Shown here in pieces: positions 2,697-26,806 of a stretch of DNA of 64,000 nt. Position 1 is the stretch's first letter, and every line of letters starts with the position of its first letter. A program made the translations under genes and the position numbers. Under the pieces are notes generated by a model, which saw only the letters and a list, made by a program, of their open reading frames with translations, had not been told where the DNA came from and did not search any database. The stretch spans positions 124,001 through 188,000 of the IMG/VR virus record IMGVR_UViG_3300033997_000092. One strand, 5' to 3'.

Positions 2697-3851
2697 TTAA
2701 TAAATACGTTGTAAGTTTTTCAAAGTCTTCACACAGGCTTTCATCAAATCACCTGTAAGCTTGGTGCCTGTAAGGTAATAAGACATAGTTTCTGCAAAGA
2801 ATTCTTTGGGATTCGTCATAGCATATTCGCTTGGGTCCATAACAGGAATGCCGATGTCGGTCATTGAAGGCCACAGGCGCTCCAGACGATCTTTGCGTCC
2901 AGTGTCATGCAACAAGTCCAAATCGAAACGATCCAGCTTGTGTACTTTTTTGATGTACGCTATGACTTCTTTTAAAATTACTGATGTGGTGTCATCCGCC
3001 ATCTCTTTTAAGAAATCGCCGATGGAACCATCGTAAGTCATAACTTCTTTGAGAAGACCACGCAGTTTCTTCTCGTCATATTTGCTGACTGTAATGCGCT
3101 TGGCATACAGGCTGAGCCACTTAGCACGGACATCTATTGGAACCATGTGGAACCAAATACCATGTGCTGCTTCGTGCAGTAGTACATACTGAAGATACTT
3201 AGCATCGTCCAACGGAATGTTGTTCAATGACATAACATCTTTACCGCCTTCACCTTCTTTGGTACGGACGTACTTGTAAGTACCTGCCCATTTACCAGCA
3301 CGTGAACGCAGCTCAATATAACCCATACGGTTGATAAAGCCTTCACACTTGTTCTTTTTCAAGATAGTGTAGGCATCAGCAAAAGCACCGACCAAAGTAA
3401 TACGTTCTTCTTTGGTGAATGAGGAACGGTATACACGCAAGTCACACCAGTCTTTGATAGTCAGGGTGCGCTGGTAAGGTTCCACGTTAACATTGAACAC
3501 TTTACCGAATGGAGGATTAGGTCCAAGATTAGCAATGACGTTGTAAGGCTCGACATCGATCTGAACAGAAGTATCGTCTTCTTCAACGCCTTTCTCAAGC
3601 ATGGCACGGCGCTTACCTATAGCAAGAGCCAGATGATTCTTGCCGTTGTACTTAACAACAATGTAGTCATCGGAATCATAAGGTATATGGCGTTCCTGTT
3701 TTTCTTCTACAGGAGCTTTTGCTTTTTTGTCTTTTTTATCAGACTTGGCTGCTTTGTCTTTCTTTTTCTTTTTGTCAGAAACAGGATCAGACTTGCCTTT
3801 GACTTTCTTTTTAGTTTCTTGCCCTTCTGGGGCGCGTAACCTGCTTATCAT
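2697..3851 (-). CDS. Zincin-like metallopeptidase-domain protein with Lys-rich N-terminus
   Basis: LLHEAAHG (HExxH) and YAMTNPKEFFAETMSYY. Confidence 0.6.
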   Translation of the reverse strand: MISRLRAPEGQETKKKVKGKSDPVSDKKKKKDKAAKSDKKDKKAKAPVEEKQERHIPYDSDDYIVVKYNGKNHLALAIGKRRAMLEKGVEEDDTSVQIDVEPYNVIANLGPNPPFGKVFNVNVEPYQRTLTIKDWCDLRVYRSSFTKEERITLVGAFADAYTILKKNKCEGFINRMGYIELRSRAGKWAGTYKYVRTKEGEGGKDVMSLNNIPLDDAKYLQYVLLHEAAHGIWFHMVPIDVRAKWLSLYAKRITVSKYDEKKLRGLLKEVMTYDGSIGDFLKEMADDTTSVILKEVIAYIKKVHKLDRFDLDLLHDTGRKDRLERLWPSMTDIGIPVMDPSEYAMTNPKEFFAETMSYYLTGTKLTGDLMKACVKTLKNLQRIY

Positions 3852-4768
3852 AAAAAACCCCGCACGTGGTTAAAATAGAAATCAAGACGTTCAATAGGAG
3901 TGTAGCGTCTAGTTATTAGTTTACACATTCCATCGTAGACAAAATGCAATAAATACTTGTTGTCTGTATTCCTTGGGTCGACCTCACTGACAACACGGGC
4001 AGAGTATTTTAACCCAGAACGCAGTGGAATGTTTAGGTTATAAATACGGTTCGACAAGTCATCAGGAGTAAAAGAACCTGGTGTAACTATAGCAAAGAAC
4101 TCGCTGTGTTTGTGAGGCCAAGCAGGAACTTCCTGAATGTGATCAAACAACATAATCAATGCGGTACGACTGAAATTTTCCTGATACGGAGCGGCTATTT
4201 CACAGAAAGTCCTGAGTGCATTAATAGTGCCGCCTTCAGTTTCAAATTTAAAACTGTGTTTTGAGAATTCACGCTGAATCTTAGCTGAGGCTGCAAACAG
4301 TCGTTTTAGGTTACCATCGAGATATTTTAACTCGGTAGCACCAGAAGACTTGCGAACGAACACACTTTGAGGAGTGCTGCCAAAGCTAAGCATAATGCGG
4401 TCACGTTCGATATAAATACCCATGAACTTAGGACGCTGTTCATAAATCTTGCCGATGTCAACAGTAGATACAGGCAGAAAGAAATCACCGAGAAGTAAAG
4501 GAGCGCTAACACGAACCAAACTAGATTGCATGTAAACGCGGAATTGAGTTTCGTTCAGTACAATAGGAATATGTCGATCAATAACACCTTTAGCGAAAGT
4601 CAAAAGCTTTTTGTTGTCTTCTGTTATTCCGTAGAGGTTGACAGTGTTTCCTTTACGTAACATCTGTTCTATCTGCGATAAGTGATCGGCTACCTTTTGA
4701 TATGTAGGCCCTCCGGGCACTGTATCTTGTCTGTTAAGCACGTATACAATCATAAGCGTGTTCCCCAC
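3848..4768 (-). CDS. Hypothetical protein
   Basis: 306-aa ORF overlapping the next gene by 4 nt. Confidence 0.7.
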   Translation of the reverse strand: MGNTLMIVYVLNRQDTVPGGPTYQKVADHLSQIEQMLRKGNTVNLYGITEDNKKLLTFAKGVIDRHIPIVLNETQFRVYMQSSLVRVSAPLLLGDFFLPVSTVDIGKIYEQRPKFMGIYIERDRIMLSFGSTPQSVFVRKSSGATELKYLDGNLKRLFAASAKIQREFSKHSFKFETEGGTINALRTFCEIAAPYQENFSRTALIMLFDHIQEVPAWPHKHSEFFAIVTPGSFTPDDLSNRIYNLNIPLRSGLKYSARVVSEVDPRNTDNKYLLHFVYDGMCKLITRRYTPIERLDFYFNHVRGFL

Positions 4769-4769
4769 A

Positions 4770-5480
4770 TGATCAGTTTGTTTTTATTGTGCGCTGCTGC
4801 GCGAAACGTGAGCGGGCTGGCGAAAAAATCGCCGCGCGGATCAAGATCATTTTCCGATCTTTACTAGCAGGAAATCTATTGTGGATCCATTAACCTATTT
4901 TAACATCTTAGCCAGGTAGATCCTAGATATAGAGGTCGTTTGGTTGCAGTGGAAACCAATAGACAGATCCGTCCCATGATACCGATTGATTCAATTGACC
5001 AGAGCACCAATTGTTATATGTTACTCCGGTGCTCCAGTTCCTAGTGTCCATGTCCTCTTGATCCCAGTGTCTGTGGAATGTCTTTAGTGATCAACTGGAA
5101 TCCAGCTTACCGTTAGGTAACATCGCCTGCGCTCCGGTTACCTAACGATCAGTTGAACTACTGTACCAGGTACTAACTAGCCGGGTGAACAGTTTATCAG
5201 TTGAACTCTGTGAGAGTTAATGGGATACAAGCTGACGAATCTTAATTTACAGTATCCTATTTATAACAATACCATGGTAGTATATGTACATCCAATGCCT
5301 ATAGCCTATACTATCATACAATGCCTATACACTACAGATATACACGTATAATAGCTATAAGTACAATTTAGGGGGTTGCTGCAAAACACCAAGGAAAAAG
5401 CTCGAAAAATCGGAAAACTTTTGACCCAGTTTCTAAAAATAGTCCAAAGAAAAATCGTGTTTTTAGACCTGAAAAAGGCT
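4770..5480. other. Candidate replication origin / regulatory non-coding region
   Basis: ~700 bp without a credible ORF; 10 GATC sites in 4771-5150, inverted and direct repeats, AT-rich tract, A-tracts about one helical turn apart. Confidence 0.45.
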
Positions 5481-5503
5481 AGGAAGATTGCTCAGCCTAG
5501 CCT
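5471..5503 (-). terminator. Intrinsic terminator
   Basis: AGGCTAGG/CCTAGCCT stem followed by T-run on - strand, just after the 5511 stop. Confidence 0.6.
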
Positions 5504-5510
5504 CATAGTT

Positions 5511-5732
5511 TTATTGCTTTTCAAAACGACTACGCATTTTAGCGCCGATTTGTTTCATTAACGATTCGATGCGATCACCGTCACCGTCCTCTACAGCTTT
5601 AGTTAATTGTTCTCCTAAGTCACTGGACACAATTTTCATAAAGCCTGATAACATCAGACCGCGGCCCTTTTTCTTTTTGGGCTTGCGGCGTGACTCAGAT
5701 ACTAACTTATCCAAATGCAGTGTTACTTTCAT
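5511..5732 (-). CDS. Small hypothetical protein
   Basis: 73-aa ORF with GAGG RBS. Confidence 0.65.
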   Translation of the reverse strand: MKVTLHLDKLVSESRRKPKKKKGRGLMLSGFMKIVSSDLGEQLTKAVEDGDGDRIESLMKQIGAKMRSRFEKQ

Positions 5733-5739
5733 ATTTACC

Positions 5740-20479: not shown

Positions 20480-21970
20480 ATGTCTAAAAAGTCAAAATCA
20501 ATTGCTGTGGCGTCGAAAGACGTTCCAGCAGTCTTTGATGATTCACTCAAGAAAGGCAAGAAAGGCAAAGCAAAAACAGAGCTTGCTGCTTTCGACCCGA
20601 GTGCCTTACTTGATGAATTACAAGACCAGACCGAACGTAAATACGGCCTGAGTTCTACAACACTTGATCGTGATGAAGCCCGCTTATCTACAGGCCTTAG
20701 TGCCTTAGATTTATTATTGATGGGTGGTATAGTTGGCGGTGGTTGGTACACAGTTTACGGCGGTGAGCAATCTGCCAAGTCAACTCTTACAATGCAACTT
20801 CTTTCTATGATAACGAACGAAGTTGAACGCCGTAACCGTAAAATCGCAAGTAGTATTTTCGACTATGAAGGTTCTTCTGATCCTGAGTACATCGGAAACA
20901 TTATGCGTACACTTGGTCTTCGTGGTGACCCGTCAACAATCTTTGGTATCAAAGATGATGATACTGGTGAGTGGCTTGTGCGTCCTACAATCCGCTACTA
21001 TGCACACGATGTCGGTGACGACTTCTTCAAGTACATTGGTAAGTTGAAGCGTGGCTTACCTGACCTTGAGAAGCACGGTAAGGACTATTACTATGTATTC
21101 GAGCATACCAAAGAGAACAAATCAAAACTCGCTGGTCTGTACGATACTAAGTACCTGACGCGCTACAATAAACTTCGTGTTCCTGCTCCTGATGGCTTTA
21201 TGCAAGCAGTTACAATCGTTGACAGCTATCCTGCTATGTTACCAGACGGCTTGGATGATGATGATCGTAACGAAGCAATGGCCGAACAAGCACGTATGTT
21301 CAGTACTGGTATTCGTAAAATCCGCGGCGGTATGCGTAAAAAACGCATGACTGTTATCGGTGTTAACCAGTTACGTGAACGTCCGGCTACAATGTTCGGT
21401 AATCCTGAATATGAGCCTTGCGGCCAAGCACTGAAATTCTACAGTGATGTCCGTATTAAATCCACCTCACGTGCTTCTGTTCCGTACGGTGGCTTCAAAC
21501 TTGACAAAGGCATTTGTGAAGAAGCAAGTGTTGATATTGAAGGCGGTAAGGATATCTATCGTTTCGTTTGTTTGAAGACAACTAAGAACAAACTTGGCGG
21601 TATTCCTAACCGTGAAGTATGGGCACGTATTTGGGTAAGCGATGCTAACGGTCAGGCGCGTGGCTTCGATCCGGTATTCGATACATTCGAGTATTTGAAA
21701 CAGTTAGGTCTTGTGTCTGGTACAATGGCTAACCTCAAGTTCGATAAGTCTACACCGTTGGGTGATGCTAAGAAAATCACGTGGATGGATTTCAAGTTGT
21801 TAGTTCTTGGAAGCAAGAAAGAAATAACTGAAGTTTGTAAACGTGCCGGCATCAAGCCTGGCTCTATCCGCTCTTGGGTTAAGAAACATTGCGCTAAAGG
21901 TGATGGTCCTCGTTTGTATAAAGAGCGCATCGTTAGCGGTAAAACTGCCGAAGAAGACAGCGACGAATAG
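20480..21970 (+). CDS. recA: RecA/UvsX-like recombinase
   Basis: STGLSALDLLLMGG, YGGEQSAKST, IVDS, NQLR, GQALKFYSDVRI. Confidence 0.88.
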   Translation: MSKKSKSIAVASKDVPAVFDDSLKKGKKGKAKTELAAFDPSALLDELQDQTERKYGLSSTTLDRDEARLSTGLSALDLLLMGGIVGGGWYTVYGGEQSAKSTLTMQLLSMITNEVERRNRKIASSIFDYEGSSDPEYIGNIMRTLGLRGDPSTIFGIKDDDTGEWLVRPTIRYYAHDVGDDFFKYIGKLKRGLPDLEKHGKDYYYVFEHTKENKSKLAGLYDTKYLTRYNKLRVPAPDGFMQAVTIVDSYPAMLPDGLDDDDRNEAMAEQARMFSTGIRKIRGGMRKKRMTVIGVNQLRERPATMFGNPEYEPCGQALKFYSDVRIKSTSRASVPYGGFKLDKGICEEASVDIEGGKDIYRFVCLKTTKNKLGGIPNREVWARIWVSDANGQARGFDPVFDTFEYLKQLGLVSGTMANLKFDKSTPLGDAKKITWMDFKLLVLGSKKEITEVCKRAGIKPGSIRSWVKKHCAKGDGPRLYKERIVSGKTAEEDSDE

Positions 21971-23344: not shown

Positions 23345-23656
23345 ATGAGTAACATCGCTATTCCAAATCCGTTAAAGCGTACAGAAATCAATGCAAAGAT
23401 TGCCTTAGCTCGTTCCCAGATTGAAGGTCTGGTAGCTTACGCCGAAGCAAACTATTCTGTGTCCTGTACTGAAGCCAAAGCGTTGCTGGCCCGTGTAGAT
23501 AAAGGTGATAAAATCTCCGATTACTTGCACAAGCTCAGTGACTTGGTTACAATGCGTGACCATTTAACTGAAGTCATCCACAACGCAGCCCTTGAAGATG
23601 CAAAGCACTTCACTGAGTTGTCAGGCCGTGTGGACAACTTCGTACTTCCCAAGTAA
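23345..23656 (+). CDS. Hypothetical protein
   Basis: 103-aa ORF, AAGGAG RBS. Confidence 0.65.
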   Translation: MSNIAIPNPLKRTEINAKIALARSQIEGLVAYAEANYSVSCTEAKALLARVDKGDKISDYLHKLSDLVTMRDHLTEVIHNAALEDAKHFTELSGRVDNFVLPK

Positions 23657-23710
23657 GTTGTCTCTACTTAGTAATTTATATCTGTAAATAAACAAGTATA
23701 GATTACTAAC

Positions 23711-23787
23711 GGCCCCTTAGCTCAGTTGGTTAGAGCACTCCCCTCATAAGGGATTGGTCTCCAGTTCAAATCTGGAAGGGGCCACCA
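23711..23787 (+). tRNA. tRNA with CAU anticodon, most likely tRNA-Ile2 (lysidine, reads AUA)
   Basis: GGCCCCT/AGGGGCC acceptor stem as in enterobacterial ileX, D arm, CT-CAT-AA loop, TTCAAAT T loop, encoded ACCA; lacks initiator features. Confidence 0.9.
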
Positions 23788-23801
23788 CTCAAGAGGCAAC
23801 T

Positions 23802-24197
23802 ATGTCTACATTGAAATTTATTACTGATCGTGGAATTGTTGATGGTTCCAAAGCAACGTCAAACGATTTTCTAGGTTCTGTTCGTACAACAGTTAATCCT
23901 GAAGTAGATGTGGAGTATGTACTCCATGCAGCAAAGAAGTTCGGGTGGAACACACTTGTTGTTAAGTCATCCACTTCTCCTGTAGTGATTGAAACTACTA
24001 TCAGCGCTCCTGGTAATTTGAACAACGCAATCTGGATAGATTTATCTCAATGTCCTAACGCTCCAGATACTGTAAACTATGATACAGAACTTCCAGCAGG
24101 CAAAGCAGTTATGTATGCGTGGGAACACCCTGTTACTGCTTTCCGTTTTAAATCGACAGCTCCCTTTGACATCGAATTCTGCTCTAAGCACGACTAA
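23802..24197 (+). CDS. Beta-rich hypothetical protein (131 aa)
   Basis: ATG 23802 with GAGG RBS directly after the tRNA; the track start at 23754 lies inside the tRNA. Confidence 0.7.
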   Translation: MSTLKFITDRGIVDGSKATSNDFLGSVRTTVNPEVDVEYVLHAAKKFGWNTLVVKSSTSPVVIETTISAPGNLNNAIWIDLSQCPNAPDTVNYDTELPAGKAVMYAWEHPVTAFRFKSTAPFDIEFCSKHD

Positions 24198-24685
24198 ATT
24201 CCTCGGGAGGGAATGGCCCCGAAAAGGCACACACGGCGGAACTTGTTAGTTTTCTCCGTATCTGATTGGTTCCTTGCATGAGCCGTGTGTGCCCCAGTAG
24301 GCCAACTGTTTATAGACCTGTTTCCTGTCACTTCGTAGACTTACTTGTCTCTGGTTGCTTTAGTAGCGACCAGCAAGATTTTGTTGCTACCGCATATAGC
24401 ACAAGTCTACTGCATAGAGAATGTAGCTGCCCTTATCGCTGCGCTTTGGACCATTCTTTATCGCATGAAAGCCTTATCCAATACAGCAAAATGAATCAGC
24501 CGCATATCGCCTTCGCAGGACTTATCCAGCTCACGGGCAGCAGCTTGAATATTTTTGTTGTGGGTACGTCACGACAGCACTAATGCCTGCTGTAGGCGAG
24601 CGCCTAATTTCTGGATTCGCGTACTCCAGAGCTGTGGCAGGGAACAGGACTATAAGCAGTTACGCAGTTCATAAGGAACAAACGT

Positions 24686-24850
24686 ATGCACGATATTTTT
24701 ATTTCGCTGCTTGTAATCATCATATTGGTTAACTGGTGTGATTACAAGTTATTCCATCGCCCTACGAGGAGACGGAACGCTACGGGGATCATAAATGCCT
24801 CGTTCCGTTGGGCGGAATGGCCGGCAACCTATTTCACTCCACGTATATGA
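24686..24850 (+). CDS. Possible 54-aa peptide with hydrophobic N-terminus embedded in the structured RNA
   Basis: AAGGA RBS; MHDIFISLLVIIILVNWCDYKLFHRPTRRR... Confidence 0.35.
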   Translation: MHDIFISLLVIIILVNWCDYKLFHRPTRRRNATGIINASFRWAEWPATYFTPRI

Positions 24851-25197
24851 CTAGCGCCTCGGACATCTTATAAATGAATCCTCAAACCAGTTAACTGGAT
24901 GTCTGATACTCTGGGCGTGATGACAAAATACAGAACGTACACCAAGAATTCGATTTTTACAAGACGGTCTCCTGTGCATTGTAACATACATTGGGTGTGG
25001 TGCACAGGAGAACCTAGAATTTATAGAGCAGGACACTGAGTACGCGCCGTCCACGTTCGGCTGCTGAGTACATATTACGCCCGTCGGCTTTCGTTTCCTC
25101 CAAGTTTCTGAGGCCGACAACTCGCTCAGTGTTCTGCACTATAGGTTCTTTGGTCAGGATCTATAGCATAGCTTTACCACAGTTTATTTGCTTTTTC

Positions 25198-25224
25198 GGC
25201 GATCTTCGGGTCGCCATTTTTTTT
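25198..25224 (+). terminator. Intrinsic terminator with C(UUCG)G tetraloop
   Basis: GGCGATC-TTCG-GGTCGCC-A-T8. Confidence 0.9.
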
Positions 25225-25234
25225 GGAGAATTGT

Positions 25235-25861
25235 ATGCTTATTGTATTTGAAGGAATGGACGGTTCAGGTAAATCAGAACAAAGTTCTAGGCTTGTACAA
25301 TATTTCAATCGCATCGGACTGAAAGCTGTGCTATTACGTGAACCTGGCTCTACACCTCTAGGCGAAAATGTCCGTGATATAGTAAAGTTCCGTCCAAACA
25401 ACATGCAGATTAGTGTTTGCGCCGAAACACTGTTAATCTTTGCTTCGCGCGCCCAGCTCGTAATAGATATAAAACAGTATTTGGAAGATGGATATATTGT
25501 TGTACTTGATCGTTGGGTATTTTCTACCTACGTGTATCAGTGCATTGCTAAAGGTGCTCCCGCAGAGGACATCGTAAACCTTTTCTATATCTCTAAGGCA
25601 AATACCGTTGTTCCTGATTTGATCATATACATGGAAAACTCTAGTTCTGTTGTCAAGCGTCCTGATGATAAACTGGAGCAAGACACCGTCGATAAAAGAG
25701 ACATTATGCTTGAAGCTTACCGCAAGCTATTCAAACAAGGCCATGACTCAAAGCTTATGGGTACATTGTTTAAGCCGTACATCGATTGCCCAATTACTCA
25801 TATCGATATAGCCGGTTACCGTATTGAACAAACTGAAGAAAAAATCAAAGCATTATTTTGA
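25235..25861 (+). CDS. tmk: Thymidylate kinase
   Basis: LIVFEGMDGSGKS, REPG, LDRW..ST.VYQ, PDL. Confidence 0.9.
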   Translation: MLIVFEGMDGSGKSEQSSRLVQYFNRIGLKAVLLREPGSTPLGENVRDIVKFRPNNMQISVCAETLLIFASRAQLVIDIKQYLEDGYIVVLDRWVFSTYVYQCIAKGAPAEDIVNLFYISKANTVVPDLIIYMENSSSVVKRPDDKLEQDTVDKRDIMLEAYRKLFKQGHDSKLMGTLFKPYIDCPITHIDIAGYRIEQTEEKIKALF

Positions 25862-26185: not shown

Positions 26186-26204
26186 ATTATCTCCTAATCA
26201 CTAT

Positions 26205-26261
26205 CTCTGTTATCCGTTGCATAAATAGGCTATTGACCTACGACTCTAACCCTTGTATAAT
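26205..26261 (+). promoter_or_regulatory. Early sigma70-type promoter with conserved upstream box (copy 1)
   Basis: CTCTGTTATCCGTTGCATAAATAGG..TTGACC-N17-TATAAT. Confidence 0.85.
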
Positions 26262-26309
26262 TCTCCCATCTGCTACAGAGCAGATTAACCCACTATCAAG
26301 GAGTTTGAA

Positions 26310-26702: not shown

Positions 26703-26749
26703 ACTGTCTGGGGAGCATGGTCTCCCCAGCACTGGCACAAACTTCATAT

Positions 26750-26806
26750 CTCTGTTATCCGTTGCATAAATAGGATATTGACTTTGCCTATATCCTAGTG
26801 TATAAT
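26750..26806 (+). promoter_or_regulatory. Early sigma70-type promoter (copy 2)
   Basis: Same upstream box; TTGACT-N17-TATAAT. Confidence 0.85.

What the first reader, a model, noticed from the sequence alone, without database searches (positions are those of the whole stretch)
24304..25149. Both long closing stems share the same motif (UUUAUAG-A / A-CUAUARG with an A.A mismatch): candidate processing or protein-binding sites
Seen: stem 1 reads GTTTATAG-A-CCTG / CAGG-A-CTATAAGC and stem 2 reads ATTTATAG-A-GCAG / CTGC-A-CTATAGGT. Each is a 25-28-bp helix with one A.A mismatch next to the same TTTATAG block. Established: RNase III cuts helices of about this length, as in rRNA precursors and T7 mRNAs. 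Inference: the 1-kb RNA is a precursor from which ~320-nt and ~110-nt RNAs are excised, or one protein recognises both stems.
Basis: partly seen in the sequence, partly recalled or inferred. Interest (0 to 1): 0.7.

Follow-up and report, generated by a model that had tools for sequence, protein, structure and literature searches.

The report
Twin long RNA helices in phage
A 1-kb gene-poor stretch of an uncultured 261-kb phage encodes a conserved, highly folded RNA. Two of its domains are each closed by an unusually long double helix with the same short motif, most likely cutting sites for the host enzyme RNase III, but no cutting has been shown.

Summary
Stem 1 (24304-24331 with 24634-24661) has 27 pairs and one A.A mismatch. 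Stem 2 (25016-25041 with 25124-25149) has 25 pairs and one A.A mismatch.

- **Exceptional:** they are the two longest helices in the whole 261-kb phage genome.
- **Shared motif:** both carry TTTATAG-A in the 5' arm, with the mismatch at column 13 or 12. Column shuffling gives P about 0.0025.
- **RNA, + strand:** every other non-Watson-Crick position is G.U on the + strand, and changes in homologues mostly keep the pairing.
- **Conservation:** three related contigs carry the same 1-kb stretch. The stem-2 domain is 97-99% identical, while the neighbouring tmk gene is 73-88% identical.
- **Limits of the motif:** stem 2 and its motif are invariant. In stem 1 the A.A becomes U-A in the most distant homologue, which has a U/C mismatch elsewhere. 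Two more distant phages have 21-22-bp helices at the same locus, without the motif.
- **No known family:** Rfam gives no match. The phage encodes no RNase III, dsRBD, reverse transcriptase, Ro, RtcB or Pfam RNA_ligase-family (PF09414) protein.

Best reading: host RNase III processing stalks in a multi-domain phage RNA co-transcribed with tRNA-Met. The helix geometry (11-12 bp, mismatch, 14-15 bp) fits published substrate rules. Processing itself is untested.

The parts
23711..23787 (+). tRNA-Met (CAT), the only tRNA of the phage. It probably heads the same transcript.
   Evidence: ARAGORN and Rfam. The same tRNA is present in L020, L021 and L022.
23802..24197 (+). Gene for a 131-aa protein of unknown function, directly upstream. 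It varies more between strains than the RNA stretch does.
   Evidence: ORF list, called genes in homologous contigs, no Pfam or PHROG match, 76-95% nucleotide identity.
24198..24303 (+). 5' module: a small hairpin (24198-24214), then a GGCC/GGCC-closed domain holding a long hairpin (24226-24293).
   Evidence: MFE and consensus folds. It is 91-100% identical in homologues, with one compensatory pair and several G-C/G.U switches.
24304..24331 (+). Stem 1, 5' arm. The motif TTTATAG-A is at 24309-24316.
   Evidence: The TTTATAG block is invariant in all 4 homologues. A24316 is T in L022.
24332..24633 (+). Domain enclosed by stem 1: a conserved core with two variable peripheral hairpins (about 24347-24372 and 24470-24570) that are replaced between strains.
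   Evidence: Alignment A1, consensus fold with compensatory pairs, separate folds, z = -5.9.
24634..24661 (+). Stem 1, 3' arm. The motif A-CTATAAG is at 24649-24656.
   Evidence: Variants: 24655 A>G (run X5), 24655 A>C (run X13, L022), 24654 A>G (L021), 24642 G>A, 24637 G>T.
24661..24688 (+). Hairpin that partly buries a Shine-Dalgarno-like AAGGA (24673-24677) just before an ATG at 24686.
   Evidence: Consensus fold, with a compensatory G-C to U-A change in L021. AAGGA and the ATG are conserved while the spacer between them varies.
24686..24850 (+). Possible small ORF of 54 aa with a hydrophobic N-terminal helix. It also folds into conserved hairpins. Its status as a gene is uncertain.
   Evidence: Open with the same length and no indels in all 4 homologues; variable columns fall 6/8/11 by codon position. 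Against: no gene was called here in the homologous contigs, there is no homologue or family, and the stop codon is mutated in run X5.
24859..24906 (+). Conserved hairpin with two compensatory base-pair changes. Coordinates are approximate.
   Evidence: columns 720/767 change UA to GC and columns 721/766 change CG to UA, each in 2 of 4 sequences.
24966..25014 (+). Long hairpin directly before stem 2.
   Evidence: an A-U to G-C compensatory change and several G.U switches.
25016..25041 (+). Stem 2, 5' arm. The motif TTTATAG-A is at 25020-25027.
   Evidence: The only changes, both in L021, are A25019>G and G25032>A, and both keep the pair.
25042..25123 (+). Domain enclosed by stem 2: a three-way junction. 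CUGAGUAC occurs twice, and one hairpin loop carries CCUCC.
   Evidence: Fold with z = -6.2; 97-99% identical in homologues.
25124..25149 (+). Stem 2, 3' arm. The motif A-CTATAGG is at 25138-25145.
   Evidence: Invariant in all 4 homologues.
25150..25225 (+). Invariant tail with a third CTATAG (25161-25166), then an intrinsic terminator (stem 25198-25215 followed by a T run).
25235..25861 (+). Thymidylate kinase gene, the downstream neighbour. It was used to find the homologous loci.
   Evidence: Pfam PF02223, E = 2.7e-27; homologues P0001-P0003.

Best explanation
The ORF-poor stretch 24198-25225 is transcribed on the + strand, probably together with the upstream tRNA-Met and the 131-aa gene, and ends at the terminator at 25198-25225. 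It folds into a chain of modules. Two of these are closed by unusually long helices built to one design: 11-12 bp holding the UUUAUAG/CUAUARG block, one A.A mismatch flanked by G-C pairs, then 14-15 bp.

The most likely role of these helices is as processing stalks for the host's RNase III. This would work like the stems that flank 16S and 23S rRNA, or the RNase III sites in T7 early transcripts. Cutting near the middle of each stalk would release:
- an RNA of about 330 nt and one of about 110 nt, each still clamped by its upper helix;
- the middle segment of about 370 nt, which may be the mRNA of a 54-aa membrane peptide, separated from the tRNA/131-aa part and from the terminator tail.

Shown: the helices, their rarity, the shared motif, the RNA strand, and conservation with pair-preserving changes. 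Inferred: co-transcription, cleavage, the enzyme and the products.
For: - The helices are real, and they are the two longest in 261 kb.
- The shared 8-nt block includes the only mismatch, at nearly the same column in both stems; P is about 0.0025.
- Every non-Watson-Crick position other than A.A is G.U on the + strand. The + strand folds better than the - strand.
- The stretch is conserved in three homologous contigs and several strain variants. The stem-2 domain is 97-99% identical against 73-88% for tmk.
- Most changes inside the stems keep pairing: U-A to U.G, U.G to U-A, A-U to G.U, and U.G to A-U with both sides changed.
- 15 predicted pairs across the stretch show compensatory change.
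- Geometry fits published RNase III rules: about two helical turns, at least 11 bp from cleavage site to helix end, and internal loops at the site in classical phage substrates (PMC1540722; PMC6212723).
- The related phages G001 and G002 carry their genomes' top-ranked helices (21-22 bp, G.U only on the coding strand) in the same RecA-tRNA-noncoding locus. These have different sequences, as expected if shape rather than sequence is read.
- A + strand terminator closes the unit.
Against: - There is no RNA-end or cleavage evidence of any kind. The runs labelled RNA are contigs, probably DNA or mixed.
- Strong sequence conservation of stem 2, and the shared motif itself, are not needed by an enzyme that reads helix shape. 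They hint at an additional sequence-specific partner.
- A register-exact match to the proximal and distal box consensus could not be made. A G-C pair next to the mismatch could even act as a catalytic antideterminant if the cut falls there (PMC1540722).
- The A.A is lost in L022 stem 1.
- The host is unknown, apart from a weak hint from the label of a Rheinheimera MAG. The phage has no RNase III of its own.
- The analogy with G001 and G002 rests on position and shape only. nhmmer and a covariance model found no homology.
Confidence: 0.45

Rival explanations
1. The two helices are structural clamps of one large, unprocessed, ornate phage RNA comparable in kind to GOLLD or ROOL. The shared motif with its A.A is a tertiary-contact or multimerisation element, not a cleavage site.
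For: - The stretch is large, multi-domain and highly conserved, with variable peripheral hairpins, and lies next to a tRNA-Met gene in a phage. GOLLD and ROOL lie near tRNA islands in phages, and GOLLD env-38 lies downstream of tRNA-Met (10.1101/2024.12.08.627333).
- The sequence of stem 2, not only its pairing, is invariant.
Against: - No Rfam family matches, even at E up to 10.
- In bacteria, near-perfect helices of 25-28 bp are expected to be RNase III substrates (PMC1540722). Escaping cleavage would need special antideterminants.
- No covarying palindromic loops that would suggest kissing contacts were seen.
Confidence: 0.22
2. A sequence-specific RNA-binding or RNA-cutting protein other than RNase III, from the phage or the host, recognises the UUUAUAG-A / A-CUAUARG element in both helices.
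For: - The motif is shared beyond chance.
- The 5' block is invariant in all homologues, and A.A is invariant in stem 2.
- Many neighbouring phage genes have no known function.
Against: - The 3' half of the motif drifts in stem 1: position 24655 is A, G or C and 24654 is A or G. The A.A closes to U-A in L022.
- The motif is absent from the analogous helices of G001 and G002.
- The phage has no recognisable dsRBD, RNase III, Ro, RtcB or Pfam RNA_ligase-family (PF09414) protein.
- The motif occurs nowhere else as a helix in the genome.
Confidence: 0.15
3. The structured modules are untranslated regions that control or protect a small-protein mRNA (ORF 24686-24850) and/or tmk. The long helices act as barriers against 5' and 3' decay or as translational regulators rather than as excision sites.
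For: - The ORF has the same length with no indels in all 4 homologues. It has a conserved AAGGA and ATG with a variable spacer, and the AAGGA is half-buried in a hairpin that shows a compensatory change.
- The terminator lies just before the tmk ribosome-binding site.
Against: - No gene was called there in the homologous contigs.
- The peptide has no homologue in 5.8 billion proteins and no family.
- Its stop codon is mutated in one strain.
- The third-codon-position excess is weak (6/8/11).
- The stem-2 domain is more conserved than the ORF.
Confidence: 0.12
4. The inverted repeats act at the DNA level, as ends of a miniature transposable element, as a cruciform or origin, or as protein-binding sites, and the RNA fold is incidental.
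For: The sequence consists of long inverted repeats around short non-coding inserts, and CTATAG is a DNA palindrome.
Against: - All 7 non-Watson-Crick positions apart from A.A are G.U on the + strand only. They would be A/C mismatches on the other strand or in a cruciform.
- Substitutions in homologues go through G.U intermediates.
- There is a single copy in the genome, no target-site duplication, and no homologue with an empty site.
- The interior of both domains is itself conserved and structured.
Confidence: 0.03

Closest known systems
RNase III processing stems of bacterial rRNA operons (the helices formed by sequences flanking 16S and 23S rRNA)
   Same: Long helices are formed by sequences that flank a large folded RNA, lie in a transcript that also carries a tRNA, and have a length suited to RNase III.
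   Different: The enclosed RNAs are not rRNA and have no known family. The two stalks share a sequence motif and a central A.A. Cleavage has not been shown.
RNase III sites of phage T7 early transcripts (R1.1 and others; PMC1540722)
   Same: A phage polycistronic RNA carries helices of about two turns with a non-paired element at the centre. The lower helix of 11-12 bp equals the reported minimum.
   Different: T7 sites are simple hairpins with an internal loop, lying between genes. Here the helices close domains of 80 and 300 nt, and the interruption is a single symmetric A.A mismatch. A match to the proximal and distal box consensus was not established.
GOLLD and ROOL large ornate phage RNAs (Rfam RF01998, RF03087; 10.1101/2024.12.08.627333)
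   Same: A large, multi-domain, conserved non-coding RNA in a phage, next to a tRNA gene (GOLLD env-38 lies downstream of tRNA-Met). It has a conserved 3' part and more variable 5' parts.
   Different: There is no covariance-model match at E up to 10. There is no evidence of multimerisation. It is known only from one small clade.
Stable small RNAs encoded with the tRNA cluster of phage T4 (species 1 and 2, also called RNA C and D). Recalled from memory, not checked here.
   Same: Phage RNAs of unknown function that are co-transcribed with tRNA and released by host RNases.
   Different: No sequence or structure comparison was made.
Type I toxin mRNAs such as hok
   Same: A small hydrophobic peptide ORF is embedded in a heavily folded mRNA with a partly buried ribosome-binding site.
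   Different: No antitoxin RNA, toxicity or homology has been shown, and translation of the ORF is itself uncertain.

Membership tests
RNase III substrate (E. coli-type rules) | Near-continuous double helix of about two turns (22 bp or more) | tested here: met
   28 and 26 columns, each with one mismatch. Criterion from PMC1540722.
RNase III substrate (E. coli-type rules) | [quoted passage not shown] | tested here: met
   If the cut is at the central mismatch, there are 12 and 15 bp either side in stem 1 and 11 and 14 bp in stem 2. Criterion from PMC1540722.
RNase III substrate (E. coli-type rules) | Proximal, middle and distal box base-pair content, and absence of antideterminants | tested here: inconclusive
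   The motif is rich in A-U, U-A and U.G pairs, as the boxes are. The register could not be fixed without the paper's figures. A G-C pair next to the mismatch could be a catalytic antideterminant.
RNase III substrate (E. coli-type rules) | Cleavage that depends on rnc in vivo, or by purified enzyme in vitro | not testable with these tools
   The public runs give contigs only and no read ends.
T7-type single-strand RNase III site | Asymmetric internal loop at the cleavage site | tested here: not met
   There is only a symmetric 1x1 A.A mismatch, and it is closed in L022 stem 1.
Any Rfam 15 family, including GOLLD, ROOL, 6S, Y RNA, tmRNA and introns | Covariance-model match | tested here: not met
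   Only the tRNA passes. Nothing relevant appears at E up to 10 in 23600-25400, and nothing in the analogous loci of G001 and G002.
Miniature inverted-repeat transposable element | Several copies, target-site duplication, and empty sites in relatives | tested here: not met
   Single copy, no flanking duplication, present in all homologues, and strand-specific G.U pairs.
Retron non-coding RNA | Adjacent reverse transcriptase gene | tested here: not met
   No RVT_1 match in the 261-kb genome. The neighbours are a 131-aa protein gene and tmk.
Y RNA / Ro system | Ro (TROVE) protein partner encoded nearby | tested here: not met
   No TROVE or RtcB match in the genome.

The most novel reading that the evidence does not exclude
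The locus is a new class of large modular phage RNA, a 'mini operon' of folded RNAs next to the phage's single tRNA. Its modules are released, or marked, through matched stalks carrying a dedicated recognition element (UUUAUAG-A / A-CUAUARG). Related jumbo phages carry analogous but sequence-diverged versions at the same RecA-tRNA locus. The released RNAs would have a role of their own in infection.
Probability: 0.25. Interest if true: 0.7.

Novelty: new variant of a known kind. Interest (0 to 1): 0.5.

Why it matters
Large folded RNAs of phages, such as GOLLD and ROOL, are among the least understood RNAs, and none is known from jumbo phages of this group. This locus offers a compact, testable case:

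- a 1-kb stretch more conserved than its protein-coding neighbours;
- two modules framed by helices of one design;
- analogous long helices at the same locus in related phages.

If the helices are RNase III sites, they show how a phage with a single tRNA gene matures a mixed tRNA, mRNA and non-coding RNA transcript, and they define the ends of two new stable RNAs to study. If they are not cut, they show how long double-stranded RNA escapes RNase III.

Tried and rejected
**Searches for known families or relatives**
- Rfam at gathering and at loose thresholds: tRNA only.
- blastn and tblastn against cultured phages: no relative of the RNA or of the 131-aa protein, and only distant tmk and RecA matches.
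- The search for related loci with tmk and with the upstream protein in IMG/VR: nothing.
- An exact 20-mer from the stem-2 domain in three collections: only a second assembly of the same phage (L053, 100% identical).

**Homology to the noncoding stretches of G001 and G002**
- blastn, nhmmer with alignment A1, and covariance model R1: no match. The resemblance therefore rests on position and shape only.
- No paralogue of the stem-2 domain in the own genome. Stem 1 is not detected by R1.

**Phage-encoded partners**
- RNase III, dsRBD, reverse transcriptase, TROVE, RtcB and the Pfam RNA_ligase family (PF09414): all absent.

**Other ideas**
- T7/SP6/K11-like promoter reading of ACTATAGG: rejected, because the octamer occurs only twice in the genome.
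- Link to a possible phage promoter box (CTGTAAA...TATAG) upstream of the tRNA: too few sites to judge.
- Small ORF: no family and no homologue.
- Read laying: strain variants only, no RNA ends. Contig breaks (for example at 24218 in two runs) were not interpreted, because contigs break at strain variation.

Full report
**Where it lies.** The window is bases 124001-188000 of a 261,032-bp IMG/VR virus record with direct terminal repeats, a jumbo phage. A second metagenome assembly holds the identical sequence. The finding lies in one of the two largest ORF-free gaps of the genome. All the parts are on the + strand:
- the phage's single tRNA gene (tRNA-Met, 23711-23787);
- a gene for a 131-aa protein with no family (23802-24197);
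- the gap, 24198-25234;
- a thymidylate kinase gene (25235-25861; PF02223).

A RecA/UvsX-like gene lies about 2 kb upstream (20480-21970). An intrinsic terminator (stem 25198-25215 plus a T run) ends the gap just before the tmk ribosome-binding site.

Stem 1 pairs 24304-24331 with 24634-24661: 28 columns, 24 Watson-Crick, 3 G.U and one A.A at 24316/24649. Stem 2 pairs 25016-25041 with 25124-25149: 26 columns, 21 Watson-Crick, 4 G.U and one A.A at 25027/25138. I scanned the whole genome on both strands for helices of at least 22 columns with at most one mismatch. These two are the longest. The three other hits have only 15 Watson-Crick pairs, and shuffled genomes give 0-2 such hits. TTTATAGA occurs three times in 261 kb, two of them here. 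Shuffling the pair columns of stem 2 reproduces an 8-nt shared run in the 5' arm in 0.25% of trials. The mismatch is at column 13 of 28 and column 12 of 26. Both helices therefore have one design: 11-12 bp, then A.A flanked by G-C pairs, then 14-15 bp.

**It is RNA, and on the + strand.** All non-Watson-Crick positions other than A.A are G.U as read on the + strand; on the other strand or in DNA they would be A/C mismatches. The + strand folds better than the - strand: z = -5.9 against -4.5 for the stem-1 domain, and -6.2 against -3.0 for the stem-2 domain. The whole 1,039-nt stretch folds into a chain of modules.

**Homologues.** The RNA has no match among cultured phages. Searching the tmk protein gave three close relatives at 95, 88 and 78% identity. 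Their contigs (L020, L021, L022) have the same gene order and a gap of 1,049-1,059 nt, which aligns along its full length (A1). Public runs from wastewater, drinking water, freshwater and subsurface samples add strain variants.

The gap evolves more slowly than its coding neighbours:

| Part | Nucleotide identity to the window |
|---|---|
| Stem-2 domain | 97-99% |
| Tail | 94-96% |
| 5' module | 91-100% |
| tmk gene | 73-88% |
| 131-aa gene | 76-95% |

Inside the stem-1 domain, two peripheral hairpins are replaced by unrelated sequence between strains while the core is kept. The consensus fold has 307 pairs, and 15 of them show a change on both sides that keeps the pair.

**How the stems vary.**
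- Stem 2 is invariant apart from two changes in L021, A25019>G and G25032>A. They convert A-U to G.U and G.U to A-U.
- In stem 1 the 5' TTTATAG block is invariant, but the partner strand drifts. Position 24655 is A, G (run X5) or C (run X13, L022); 24654 is A or G; 24642 is G or A.
- The pair 24328/24637 is U.G in the window and L020, A-U in L022 (both sides changed) and U/U in L021.
- In L022 the A.A has become U-A, and a U/C mismatch appears six columns lower.

The helix and the 5' block are therefore conserved in the clade. The A.A is fixed in stem 2 only.

**More distant phages.** RecA-based searches found two complete or near-complete relatives, G001 (59% RecA identity) and G002 (52%). 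Both have a tRNA downstream of RecA (Met in G001, Lys in G002), then long ORF-free, strongly folded stretches (z = -9.0 and -5.2) that end in a terminator. In each genome the top-ranked long helix lies in that stretch, on the coding strand, with only G.U exceptions:
- L002:12044-12143 (22 bp), plus a perfect 19-bp helix at L002:8543-8770;
- L003:9593-9705 (21 bp), plus an 18-column helix with one mismatch at L003:9515-9585.

None has TTTATAG or an A.A. Neither nhmmer nor a covariance model of the stem-2 domain detects homology. Long double-stranded helices at this locus thus look like a shared trait of the phage group, while the motif is specific to the window's clade. This step is an inference from position and shape.

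**What lies between the stems.** An ORF of 54 codons (24686-24850) starts 8 nt after a conserved AAGGA. That element is half-buried in a hairpin whose closing pair covaries.
- For a real gene: the ORF keeps its length without indels in all four sequences, and it encodes a hydrophobic helix followed by a basic tail.
- Against: variable columns fall 6/8/11 by codon position. No gene was called there in the three contigs. The peptide has no homologue or family. One strain has lost the stop codon.
I treat it as possible, not established.

**Mechanism.** The best-supported reading is that the helices are stalks for host RNase III. Published work on the E. coli enzyme states four relevant points:
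- substrates typically have two helical turns;
- an 11-bp helix between cleavage site and helix end is the minimum for good reactivity;
- exhaustive digestion leaves 11-15-bp products;
- internal loops can restrict cleavage, and classical phage sites have unpaired positions at the cut (PMC1540722; PMC6212723).

The 11-12 / mismatch / 14-15 layout fits these numbers. Cutting near the mismatches would give RNAs of about 334 and 112 nt held shut by their upper helices, a middle segment of about 370 nt, the tRNA/131-aa part, and the terminator tail. I could not place the proximal and distal boxes in register, because the figures are not held as text. A G-C pair next to the cut can suppress catalysis, so binding without cutting is not excluded.

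The phage encodes no RNase III or dsRBD protein, so the enzyme would be the host's. The only host hint is that one homologous contig was binned with a Rheinheimera/Pararheinheimera MAG.

**Rivals.**
- A structural-clamp reading (an unprocessed ornate RNA) remains open.
- So does a second, sequence-specific partner. This would explain why the motif is shared at all.
- A DNA-level or mobile-element reading is rejected: the G.U pairs are strand-specific, there is a single copy, there is no target duplication, and no homologue has an empty site.
- Retron, Y-RNA and ligase-based circularisation ideas find no partner genes.

**Comparison with known systems.** In working principle the closest are the rRNA processing stems and the T7 early RNase III sites. 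In genomic setting the closest are GOLLD and ROOL, large phage RNAs near tRNA genes; one GOLLD lies downstream of tRNA-Met (10.1101/2024.12.08.627333). The stretch belongs to no Rfam family.

**Limits.**
- Only four sequences plus strain variants, about 10% diverged.
- No transcript data.
- Host unknown.
- E-values from the home-made covariance model are rough.

Noticed in passing
window 4769-5739 (- strand): A second large ORF-free gap lies between two - strand genes. It folds with z = -5.3 on the - strand. Together with the finding's stretch, it is one of the two largest ORF-free gaps of the genome, and may be another structured RNA or a regulatory region.
   Followed up: partly
window 26204-26262 and 26749-26806: Two near-identical sigma-70-type promoters (TTGACC or TTGACT, 17 nt, TATAAT) share the upstream box ATCTCTGTTATCCGTTGCATAAATAGG. 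They lie ahead of two small + strand genes.
   Followed up: no
window 23682-23703; L002 and L003 intergenic sites: The box CTGTAAATAAACAAGTATAGAT sits just upstream of the tRNA-Met gene. The relatives G001 and G002 carry a recurrent intergenic box AAAACTGTAAACA (10 and 6 sites), including one ahead of the G002 tRNA. These may be a phage promoter.
   Followed up: partly
L005:796-5279: The RecA/UvsX homologue of relative G004 matches in three separated pieces (796-1005, 2736-3338, 4764-5279). This suggests intervening sequences such as introns, inteins or homing-endonuclease insertions.
   Followed up: no
window 23793-24092: The 131-aa gene upstream is much more diverged between co-occurring strains than the RNA stretch next to it: 21 differences in 112 nt in run X5, against 9 substitutions and 4 indels in 1,274 nt.
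   Followed up: partly
window 24654-24669: There is a tandem 8-nt duplication, AAGCAGTT then ACGCAGTT, at the foot of stem 1's 3' arm. L022 has one unit only, and run X13 has two identical units. The 5' arm could pair with either copy.
   Followed up: partly
window 25036-25043 and 25064-25071: CUGAGUAC occurs twice inside the stem-2 domain, and both copies can pair with 25121-25131. This allows an alternative fold (L022 favours a 5-bp version). A hairpin loop at 25091-25101 carries CCUCC, which resembles an anti-Shine-Dalgarno sequence.
   Followed up: no
window 24707-24750: A 44-nt block inside the possible small ORF is identical in all four homologues, including at synonymous sites. It forms a hairpin of at least 10 bp (CUUGUAAUCA / UGAUUACAAG). 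A weak antisense promoter-like match (24747-24719) falls in it.
   Followed up: no
window 24218: Contigs of two independent runs (X7, labelled RNA, and X11) end exactly at 24218, just after the first hairpin and the GGCC. This could be strain variation breaking the assembly graph rather than an RNA end.
   Followed up: no
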